From Euprymna scolopes (lineage: Eukaryota), in the NCBI GenBank assembly GCA_053919585.1, contig CM132787.1: a DNA stretch of 64,000 nucleotides. The stretch is one strand, 5' to 3'. The notes under the pieces are model-generated. The model was not told the DNA's origin. It saw only the letters and a program-made list of their open reading frames with translations, and did not search any database. This document shows positions 58,190 through 58,597 of this stretch, piece by piece. The position numbers and the translations under genes are program-made. Each line of letters begins with the position of its first letter. Positions within the stretch are counted from its first letter, which is position 1.

Positions 58190-58597
58190 ATGGCGTATTT
58201 ACCGGCAACTGCTTCAACTGAGGTGAAGGAGAAGTCTAAACTCTCTCAGACGAAACATCCTAAGTACAAAGAAATGATTATAGAAGCTATAGCTACCTTA
58301 AACGAGAAAGGAGGTTCGTCCAGGCAGGCTATCGTTAAGTACATCATGGACAATTTCGATGTGTCTGGATATCACAAGTTTGTTAATCTCCAAGTCAAGA
58401 AGGGACTGACATATGGTGTTAATAACATTTTCAAGGTAGACTCAATCTTCAAGAAATCTCGCTCGCTCAAAAGAGGCAGTGCGTTAAAATCCAAGGCAAA
58501 AGCCAAAAGTTCTGAGTTCACATTGAAGCCTGCCACTGAGACGGTCAAGAAATCTACAAGTAAAAAAATTATCAATACAAAGAAAAATGGCAAATAA
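58190..58597 (+). CDS. Linker histone H1/H5-family protein, atypical short variant (135 aa, intronless)
   Basis: Winged-helix signature HPKYKEMIIEAIATLNEKGGSSRQAIVKYIMDNF..VNLQVKKGLTYGV; Lys/Ser-rich C-terminus; TATA upstream and stem-loop relic downstream. Confidence 0.92.
   Translation: MAYLPATASTEVKEKSKLSQTKHPKYKEMIIEAIATLNEKGGSSRQAIVKYIMDNFDVSGYHKFVNLQVKKGLTYGVNNIFKVDSIFKKSRSLKRGSALKSKAKAKSSEFTLKPATETVKKSTSKKIINTKKNGK

What the first reader, a model, noticed from the sequence alone, without database searches (positions are those of the whole stretch)
58190..58597. Atypical linker histone: expanded basic wing and almost no C-terminal tail
Seen: helices I-III are well conserved (SSRQAI, as in H1.0/H5-like and many invertebrate H1s), but the usual wing (Q.KG.GASGSFKL) is missing. 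Instead IFKV is followed by about 23 K/R/S-rich residues and then SEFTLKP, leaving a tail of only about 20 aa, against roughly 100 in ordinary H1. The pseudogenes show the same layout (KIFQEV..long insert..TELTVKP..short tail), so it is a family trait rather than a recent lesion. Inference: a specialised, possibly germline or sperm, H1 variant family.
Basis: partly seen in the sequence, partly recalled or inferred. Interest (0 to 1): 0.7.

Follow-up and report, generated by a model that had tools for sequence, protein, structure and literature searches.

The report
Short, transcribed H1-like linker histone gene
This is a real, intact and transcribed mollusc gene for an unusually small linker-histone (H1) relative, but its "expanded wing" is better read as a normal-length wing region that lost its glycine-rich loop, followed by a short basic tail.

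Summary
The 135-aa ORF at 58190-58597 (+) is real and belongs to the H1/H5 family (Pfam PF00538, 59.6 bits; only helices I-III match). It has a TATA box. RNA-like contigs from two studies start 25-45 nt after that box and run on without a break for at least 1.7 kb. Neither of the two alleles seen in them has an indel in the ORF.

The "expanded wing" is not supported.
- A canonical-H1 profile aligns residues 80-96 without gaps onto the ordinary wing (SLKR on SFKL).
- Joining IFKV directly to SEFTLKP adds no score.
- Two AlphaFold runs predict no strand after helix III (pLDDT about 50).

So the wing region has normal length, lacks glycines and may be unfolded. The tail is 39 aa.

Two new points:
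- A decayed histone 3' stem-loop lies 28 nt after the stop. It is better kept behind a paralogue. The stop is homologous in three of four copies, so the short tail is ancestral. The mRNA reads through to AATAAA signals.
- A decayed tandem copy lies at 60186-60560.

Germline or sperm use could not be tested. Short-tailed H1 variants with degenerate stem-loops are already known in Oikopleura. This is a modest, lineage-specific H1 variant.

The parts
58120..58128 (+). TATA box (TATATAAAA) of the gene
   Evidence: Read directly. RNA-like contigs begin 25 nt (X5, 58145) and 44 nt (X1, 58164) downstream of its start, and nothing is laid on the unique 57806-58073.
58145..58189 (+). 5' UTR (approximate start of the transcript at 58145)
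   Evidence: First base of the X5 contig. There is no ATG in 58145-58189, and the start codon context is GAGATGG.
58190..58597 (+). Complete coding sequence, 135 aa plus stop, no intron
   Evidence: ORF list. Contigs of X1 and X5 are colinear with the genome, with no joint and no indel in the ORF. The predicted protein is 15.0 kDa with pI 10.2.
58256..58426 (+). Residues 23-79: helices I-III of the H1/H5 globular domain
   Evidence: PF00538 at 59.6 bits. AlphaFold2 helices 26-37, 45-55 and 62-74/83 with pLDDT 82-94. Foldseek places 56 columns on H1.0/H5 at rmsd 1.6 A. All 12 nearly invariant columns of 125 H1s are kept.
58427..58477 (+). Residues 80-96 (IFKVDSIFKKSRSLKRG): wing-equivalent segment of canonical length, with no glycine-rich loop and 6 basic residues
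   Evidence: Gap-free alignment to the wing of a 68-sequence canonical H1 profile (SLKR on SFKL), with a net score gain of about zero. No strand is predicted and pLDDT is about 50.
58478..58594 (+). Residues 97-135: short basic tail (39 aa; 12 K+R, 11 S+T, 1 P), holding the family motif SEFTLKP (58511-58531)
   Evidence: Composition. The motif is kept as TELTVKP or QLTVIP in the paralogues. The region is predicted disordered.
58626..58641 (+). Relic of a histone 3' stem-loop (AGCCGTTTTAAGTGGC), 28 nt after the stop, no longer able to pair in register
   Evidence: Homologous by alignment to AGCCCTTTTCAGGGTC at 19011-19026 behind a paralogue. No Rfam match up to E = 10. Fold z-score is -0.06. 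Transcript contigs run through it.
58598..59842 (+). 3' UTR of the shorter transcript form. The first poly(A) signals are at 59613, 59736, 59782 and 59843. X1 contigs go on to about 60860.
   Evidence: X5 contigs end at 59842, and X1 pieces continue past 60600. No poly(A) tail was seen, because only contigs were available.
60186..60560 (+). Decayed tandem copy of the gene, with stops and frameshifts, spanning nearly the whole coding sequence
   Evidence: Local DNA alignment to the CDS scores 103, against 28.8 +/- 3.7 (maximum 41) in 200 shuffles. It has its own stem-loop relic.
9390..10130 (+). Older broken paralogue(s) of the same family
   Evidence: tblastn and three-frame reading.
18250..19026 (+). 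Older broken paralogue(s) ending in the best-kept stem-loop relic (19011-19026)

Best explanation
This is the one intact, transcribed member of a lineage-specific family of small H1-like genes in a mollusc genome.

The protein has four parts:
- a 22-aa N-terminal tail;
- a well-kept three-helix H1/H5 globular core;
- a 17-residue wing equivalent of normal length, whose glycine-rich loop has been replaced by basic and hydrophobic residues and which may no longer fold as a hairpin;
- a 39-aa moderately basic, S/T-rich tail.

The family arose from a stem-loop (replication-dependent type) H1 gene that already ended at this stop codon. In the surviving gene the stem-loop has decayed. Transcription runs through it to AATAAA signals 1.0-1.2 kb further on, so the gene now behaves like a replication-independent, polyadenylated variant.

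Inferred mechanism: the core docks on nucleosomal and linker DNA as in H1.0/H5. The short tail and altered wing would give weaker, more mobile binding and less compaction than bulk H1. Expression is confined to some tissues or stages.

Shown here: gene anatomy, transcription, family relations and the stem-loop relic. Inferred: chromatin binding, its strength, and polyadenylation.
For: Family and fold:
- PF00538 at E = 3.7e-16. H1.0 and H5 are the best solved relatives.
- The exhaustive search gives 755 relatives at E <= 0.001, essentially all of them H1s. None of the best 150 shares the C-terminal layout.

Transcription:
- X5 and X1 contigs start at 58145 and 58164, just after the TATA box at 58120. 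They cover the ORF and at least 1.2 kb beyond it, while the unique upstream DNA is uncovered.
- 15 runs of 6 studies hold part of the stretch.

Integrity:
- There are 8 substitutions and no indel in the ORF across two alleles, whereas indels begin in the UTR.
- pN/pS is 0.13 in the core and 1.1 in the tails, though the counts are small.

Wing:
- Gap-free canonical alignment of residues 80-96, and no gain for the IFKV+SEFTLKP construct.
- No strand in two AlphaFold runs.

Origin:
- The stem-loop relic is homologous in all four copies, and the stop is homologous in the gene and the two upstream paralogues.
- No Rfam stem-loop match.

Precedent: Oikopleura H1 variants with short tails and a degenerate stem-loop, taken to be replacement variants (PMC3156773).
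Against: - No orthologue was found, so long-term constraint cannot be measured.
- The polymorphism counts (5 non-synonymous, 3 synonymous) do not differ significantly from neutrality.
- The RNA nature of X1 and X5 is the tool's guess, backed only by the coverage pattern. Strand, cap site and poly(A) tail were not seen.
- One poly(A) RNA run has no read on the gene.
- The wing alignment adds about zero bits, so it is the simplest alignment, not a proven one.
- Low AlphaFold confidence does not prove disorder.
- All other family members seen in the window are dead.
Confidence: 0.65

Rival explanations
1. The winged helix is kept, but the wing is expanded: IFKV and EFTL are the two strands, joined by a loop of about 23 basic residues, and only about 20 aa remain as tail. 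The family is a germline or sperm H1 variant.
For: IFKV sits exactly where strand 2 of canonical H1 lies. SEFTLKP is a motif kept in the paralogues as TELTVKP, so it is under some common constraint. Expression is uneven among RNA studies.
Against: No strand is predicted at 80-83 or 109-112 in either AlphaFold run, and pLDDT there is 44-57. Joining IFKV to SEFTLKP scores no better than cutting the protein at residue 79 (70.7 against 70.7, and 90.1 against 94.8 bits). A gap-free canonical alignment already accounts for residues 80-96. K+R of 22% is low for a sperm nuclear basic protein. No tissue labels were available.
Confidence: 0.07
2. This is a gene on its way out. It is still transcribed and still open, but no longer under selection, like its dead neighbours. 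The altered wing and short tail are decay, not specialisation.
For: All other copies in the window are pseudogenes. The wing matches no profile. Five of eight allelic differences change the protein. No orthologue was found.
Against: The ORF is open in three haplotypes. All 12 nearly invariant H1 core residues are kept. The only changes inside helices I-III are synonymous, plus one loop change, D57N. The word depth in X5 (337) is high, although the tool warns that contig depth is a poor measure of expression. The short tail and altered wing predate the split from the old paralogues, so the design persisted for a long time.
Confidence: 0.2
3. The protein is not a linker histone in function. It would be a small GH1-domain DNA-binding protein that competes with bulk H1 or marks particular loci, as I recall plant GH1-HMGA/GH1-Myb proteins doing.
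For: It has only the three-helix core plus a short tail, with no A/P/K-rich condensing domain. The mRNA is not of the stem-loop histone type.
Against: There is no second domain of any kind. The core is closer to animal H1 (94.8 bits) than to other GH1 groups. It descends from a stem-loop histone gene.
Confidence: 0.1

Closest known systems
Vertebrate replacement linker histones H1.0 / H5
   Same: They are the best solved relatives of the globular core (E about 1e-6; 56 columns at rmsd 1.6 A; GSSRQ motif). From general knowledge, they are solitary genes with polyadenylated, replication-independent mRNA and shorter tails than bulk H1.
   Different: H1.0 and H5 have the canonical wing (KGVGASGSFRL) and a C-terminal domain of about 100 aa. 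Here the wing equivalent has no glycine-rich loop and no predicted hairpin, and the tail is 39 aa.
Oikopleura dioica short H1 variants (OdH1.1, H1.3, H1.4, H1t)
   Same: They are short N- and C-terminal tailed linker histones, with stage- or male-specific members. The paper mentions a degenerate stem-loop, which it takes as a sign of replacement-variant use (PMC3156773).
   Different: They belong to another phylum and are not shown to be orthologous. I did not compare their wings, and no sequence of theirs was examined here.
Mollusc 'orphon' H1 genes (Mytilus)
   Same: They are H1 genes that lie outside the core-histone repeat and carry polyadenylation signals (PMC6210712 citing Eirin-Lopez et al.).
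   Different: As far as I know, those are full-length H1s with canonical wing and tail. This one is half their size, and its stem-loop is a relic only.
Plant-type H1 with a short wing (..KVKASFKLS..)
   Same: phmmer and MAFFT can lay IFKVDSIFKKS on that short hairpin, and it adds 0.8-2.5 bits.
   Different: The core is clearly nearer to animal H1 (94.8 against 70.7 bits). AlphaFold with a 125-sequence short-wing alignment still predicts no hairpin.
Sperm protamine-like proteins PL-I / PL-II of bivalves
   Same: From general knowledge, they are H1-derived, carry a winged-helix core and are lineage-specific in molluscs.
   Different: From memory, those proteins are much more basic. This one has 22% K+R and 7% D+E. 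Sperm expression was not testable.

Membership tests
Linker histone H1/H5 family (Pfam PF00538) | Globular domain scoring above the Pfam gathering cut-off | tested here: met
   59.6 bits against a cut-off of 22.4, residues 23-78. 755 H1-type relatives were found in the exhaustive search.
Linker histone H1/H5 family (Pfam PF00538) | Three-helix bundle superposable on solved GH1/GH5 | tested here: met
   AlphaFold2 pLDDT is 82-94 over 21-80. Foldseek gives H1.0/H5 chains with 56 columns, rmsd 1.6-1.8 A and probability 1.00, although E is only 6.5e-3.
Linker histone H1/H5 family (Pfam PF00538) | Beta-hairpin wing after helix III (profile positions 56-74; G.GASGSF loop in animals) | tested here: inconclusive
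   The Pfam match stops at profile position 55 of 74. A segment of the right length is present and aligns without gaps, but it adds no score. No strand is predicted in two runs, at low confidence.
Canonical metazoan (bulk) H1 | C-terminal domain of about 100 aa rich in K, A and P, with S/TPxK motifs | tested here: not met
   The tail is 39 aa (45 if counted from residue 91), with 12 K+R, 4 A and 1 P. No S/TPxK motif can be read in the sequence.
Replication-dependent histone gene | 3' stem-loop (Rfam RF00032) shortly after the stop, with the mRNA ending there | tested here: not met
   No Rfam match up to E = 10. The relic pairs at 2 of 6 positions and its fold z-score is -0.06. Contigs run more than 1.2 kb past it.
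Replication-independent, polyadenylated H1 variant | mRNA with a long 3' UTR ending at a poly(A) signal | tested here: inconclusive
   Contigs end at 59842, close to AATAAA at 59782. Two oligo-dT runs hold a small share. No tail or strand could be seen in contigs.
Sperm nuclear basic protein of the protamine-like (PL) type | Very high K+R content and sperm- or testis-specific expression | tested here: not met
   K+R is 22%. Tissue of expression is not testable because the run labels are coded.

The most novel reading that the evidence does not exclude
A mollusc-specific 'mini-H1' family. Its only surviving member has given up both the folded wing and the long condensing tail, and has moved from stem-loop to poly(A) expression. 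It would act in a restricted tissue or stage (possibly germline or embryo) as a highly mobile linker histone, or as an antagonist of bulk H1.
Probability: 0.25. Interest if true: 0.5.

Novelty: new variant of a known kind. Interest (0 to 1): 0.3.

Why it matters
H1 is the most variable histone, and how much of it is needed for function is still debated. This is a natural, expressed protein that keeps only the three-helix core, a glycine-free wing equivalent and a 39-aa tail. That makes it a ready-made minimal construct for testing what the wing and the C-terminal domain contribute to nucleosome binding. The locus also records, in one window, how a stem-loop histone gene becomes a polyadenylated variant while its duplicates die. 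Short-tailed H1 variants with degenerate stem-loops are already described, so the finding extends known variation and does not overturn it.

Tried and rejected
- Word-index protein search, whole protein and residues 72-135: nothing found. The exhaustive search shows the first blank was a sensitivity limit. The second blank means only that no indexed protein shares the tail.
- Exact look-up of the protein: not in the collection.
- Cluster look-up of ten relatives, for taxonomy: almost no labels.
- DNA run X4, meant to check the assembly: it laid nothing on the gene, so there is no independent DNA check.
- The downstream element TTWATGCGWTT reported for the core histone genes of this genome: only chance-level matches in the window, none behind the gene or its paralogues.
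- Canonical stem-loop pattern: one match in the window, no more than chance expects. It is meaningful only through its position and homology.
- Three competing wing alignments: short hairpin IFKV-DS-IFKK, short hairpin IFKKS-RS-LKR, and the canonical-length one. Scores differ by 2.5 bits or less, so I prefer the gap-free one on parsimony only.
- A possible 6-codon internal repeat, IFKVDS/IFKKSR. By my own count, 8 of the first 9 bases agree but only 9 of 18 overall, which is too weak to claim.
- Phylogeny with H1, H5 and PL proteins: not attempted. Only 56 positions can be aligned, and almost none of the closest relatives I looked up carried a taxon label.

Full report
**What is there.**
Window 58190-58597 (+) holds an uninterrupted ATG-to-TAA ORF of 135 aa. 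Pfam gives one family, PF00538 Linker_histone, at 59.6 bits against a cut-off of 22.4. The match covers residues 23-78, which is profile positions 1-55 of 74. So the three helices match and the wing does not.

The best solved relatives are the globular domains of H1.0 and H5 (E about 1e-6), again only up to about residue 78. The protein is 15.0 kDa with pI 10.2, 22% K+R and 7% D+E.

The window is AT-rich, repeat-rich animal DNA. Earlier notes of this scan call the genome a mollusc, and two 'mollusc metagenome' RNA runs hold part of the stretch.

**Is it a real, working gene?**
- A TATA box (TATATAAAA) lies at 58120-58128. There is no ATG between 58145 and the start codon, and the start context is GAGATGG.
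- Fifteen public runs from six studies hold part of the stretch.
- When laid, the contigs of X5 begin at 58145 and those of X1 at 58164. They are colinear through the ORF with no joint, and go on to 59842 (X5) and beyond 60600 (X1).
- Neither run covers the unique DNA at 57806-58073. That pattern fits a transcript starting about 25 nt after the TATA box, not genomic DNA. The tool itself marks 'RNA' as a guess, and contigs show neither strand nor tail.
- One poly(A) RNA run (X18, raw reads, 12% read) has no read on the gene, so expression is not universal.
- The DNA run X4 laid nothing on the gene, so it gave no independent assembly check.
- The two RNA-like alleles differ from the window by 8 substitutions and no indel within the ORF. 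Indels begin only at 58706 in the UTR.
- The changes are Y3S, L4V, D57N, K126T and I127F, plus three synonymous ones. Inside helices I-III only synonymous changes occur.
- pN/pS is 0.45 overall, 0.13 in the core and 1.1 in the tails, but with 5 and 3 changes this is not significant.

**Relatives.**
The word-index search found nothing, which was a sensitivity limit. The exhaustive profile search found 755 proteins at E <= 0.001. The best scores belong to proteins with several H1 domains in one chain, whose scores add up. Single-domain hits are ordinary H1s, 33-58% identical over the core.

None of the best 150 has the IFKV...SEFTLKP layout. A search restricted to residues 72-135 was blank, and the exact protein is not in the collection. 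So the C-terminal half is lineage-specific as far as these tools see.

**The wing question.**
I tested this in three ways.

1. Profiles.
   - A profile of 68 canonical animal H1s aligns I80-G96 without a single gap on the 17 wing positions (t-L-K-Q-s-K-G-t-G-A-s-G-S-F-k-l-g). IFKV falls on strand 2 and SLKR on SFKL.
   - The net score gain is about zero: 94.8 bits for residues 1-79 and 94.7 for 1-96.
   - A profile of 125 short-wing (plant-type) H1s aligns IFKVDSIFKKS on L.KVKASYKLS and gains 0.8-2.5 bits.
   - A construct in which IFKV is followed directly by SEFTLKP gains nothing in either profile (70.7 against 70.7, and 90.1 against 94.8).
2. AlphaFold2 with 125 animal H1s gives helices 26-37, 45-55 and 62-83 at high confidence. 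It gives no strand, and pLDDT is 50-60 from residue 81 to the end.
3. AlphaFold2 with 125 short-wing H1s gives helices 62-74 and 77-80. Again there is no strand, with pLDDT 44-53 beyond residue 81.

Foldseek matches only 56 columns of H1.0/H5, which is the helices.

My reading is this:
- The wing equivalent is residues 80-96. It has canonical length but no glycine-rich loop.
- It is more basic than usual, with six K/R in 17 residues. It is possibly unfolded.
- SEFTLKP is a motif within the tail, and the tail is 39 aa.
- The expanded-wing hairpin is not supported.

**The family and its history.**
Copies at about 9390-10130 and 18250-19000 read ..GVARKIFQEV.., then about 28 residues, then TELTVKP (QLTVIP in the second copy), then about 17 residues and a stop.

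I found a further, much closer decayed copy in tandem at 60186-60560. It aligns to nearly the whole coding sequence with score 103, against 28.8 +/- 3.7 for shuffles.

An alignment of the 3' ends of all four copies shows a shared element behind the stop. In the gene and the two upstream paralogues the stop itself is at the homologous place:
- AGCCGTTTTAAGTGGC in the gene (58626-58641);
- AGCCCTTTTCAGGGTC at 19011-19026.

The second is two mismatches from the histone stem-loop consensus. This is a relic of the histone 3' stem-loop.

In the gene it pairs at only 2 of 6 positions in register, folds no better than shuffles (z = -0.06) and has no Rfam match up to E = 10. The transcript contigs run straight through it. 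The first AATAAA/ATTAAA signals downstream are at 59613, 59736, 59782 and 59843, and the X5 contigs end at 59842.

So the family descends from a stem-loop H1 gene that already had this short tail. The survivor has become a read-through, probably polyadenylated gene with a 1.2-kb 3' UTR.

**How it probably works (inference).**
The core keeps all 12 nearly invariant H1 positions and several basic residues. From my memory of the GH5 and H1.0 literature, some of the positions these occupy contact DNA. In the canonical-profile alignment K70, K82 and K94 are kept, while T74 and S85 replace lysines.

It should therefore still dock on nucleosomal and linker DNA. With a 39-aa, S/T-rich tail and an altered wing, I expect weaker and more mobile binding and little compaction. 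Expression appears limited to some tissues or stages.

Germline or sperm use is possible but untested. The modest basicity argues against a bulk sperm packaging protein.

**Comparison with what is known.**
- H1.0 and H5 are the nearest solved cores, but they have a canonical wing and a tail of about 100 aa.
- Mollusc H1 genes are known as solitary 'orphon' genes with poly(A) signals (PMC6210712).
- Oikopleura has short-tailed linker histones, a male-specific shortest one, and a degenerate stem-loop read as a sign of a replacement variant (PMC3156773).

The present gene is thus a new, more extreme variant of a known theme. I found no description of this particular family, but my literature search was shallow.

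**Verdict.**
- The expanded-wing reading is not supported.
- The short-tail family trait is supported.
- The germline inference is open.
- Interest is modest (0.3).

Noticed in passing
window 60186-60560 (+): A decayed tandem duplicate of the H1-like gene lies 1.6 kb downstream of its stop, inside the region covered by the longer X1 contigs. Its helix III reads more like canonical H1 (..HFKRALKADV..) than the live gene does.
   Followed up: partly
window 19011-19026 (+): A near-canonical histone 3' stem-loop (AGCCCTTTTCAGGGTC) sits about 30 nt behind the stop of a broken H1 paralogue. It shows that the pseudogene cluster came from stem-loop-type genes.
   Followed up: partly
window 56734-57805: A very high-copy repeat lies just upstream of the gene. 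Summed word depth reaches 1.36 million in the DNA run, and it is also read in poly(A) RNA. It has a (TGTA)n/(TA)n tract near 57425 and variable 40-70-nt deletions.
   Followed up: no
P0001 (746 aa) and P0002 (486 aa), JGI metagenome contigs: The best-scoring relatives are single ORFs with seven and four H1 globular domains in a row, each with a short non-canonical wing (for example ..LKNGVVLNNSNGCFLA..). Their organism is unknown.
   Followed up: no
window 32117-32413 (+): An ORF fragment reads like a non-LTR retrotransposon reverse transcriptase (..MQYGFHSARSTADVL..).
   Followed up: no
window 58427-58462 (+): Adjacent six-codon units IFKVDS / IFKKSR share 8 of their first 9 bases. This could be an old tandem duplication inside the wing region, but only 9 of 18 bases agree overall.
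   Followed up: partly
window 48234-48729: A run of 496 N (assembly gap or masked stretch). It was left untouched.
   Followed up: no
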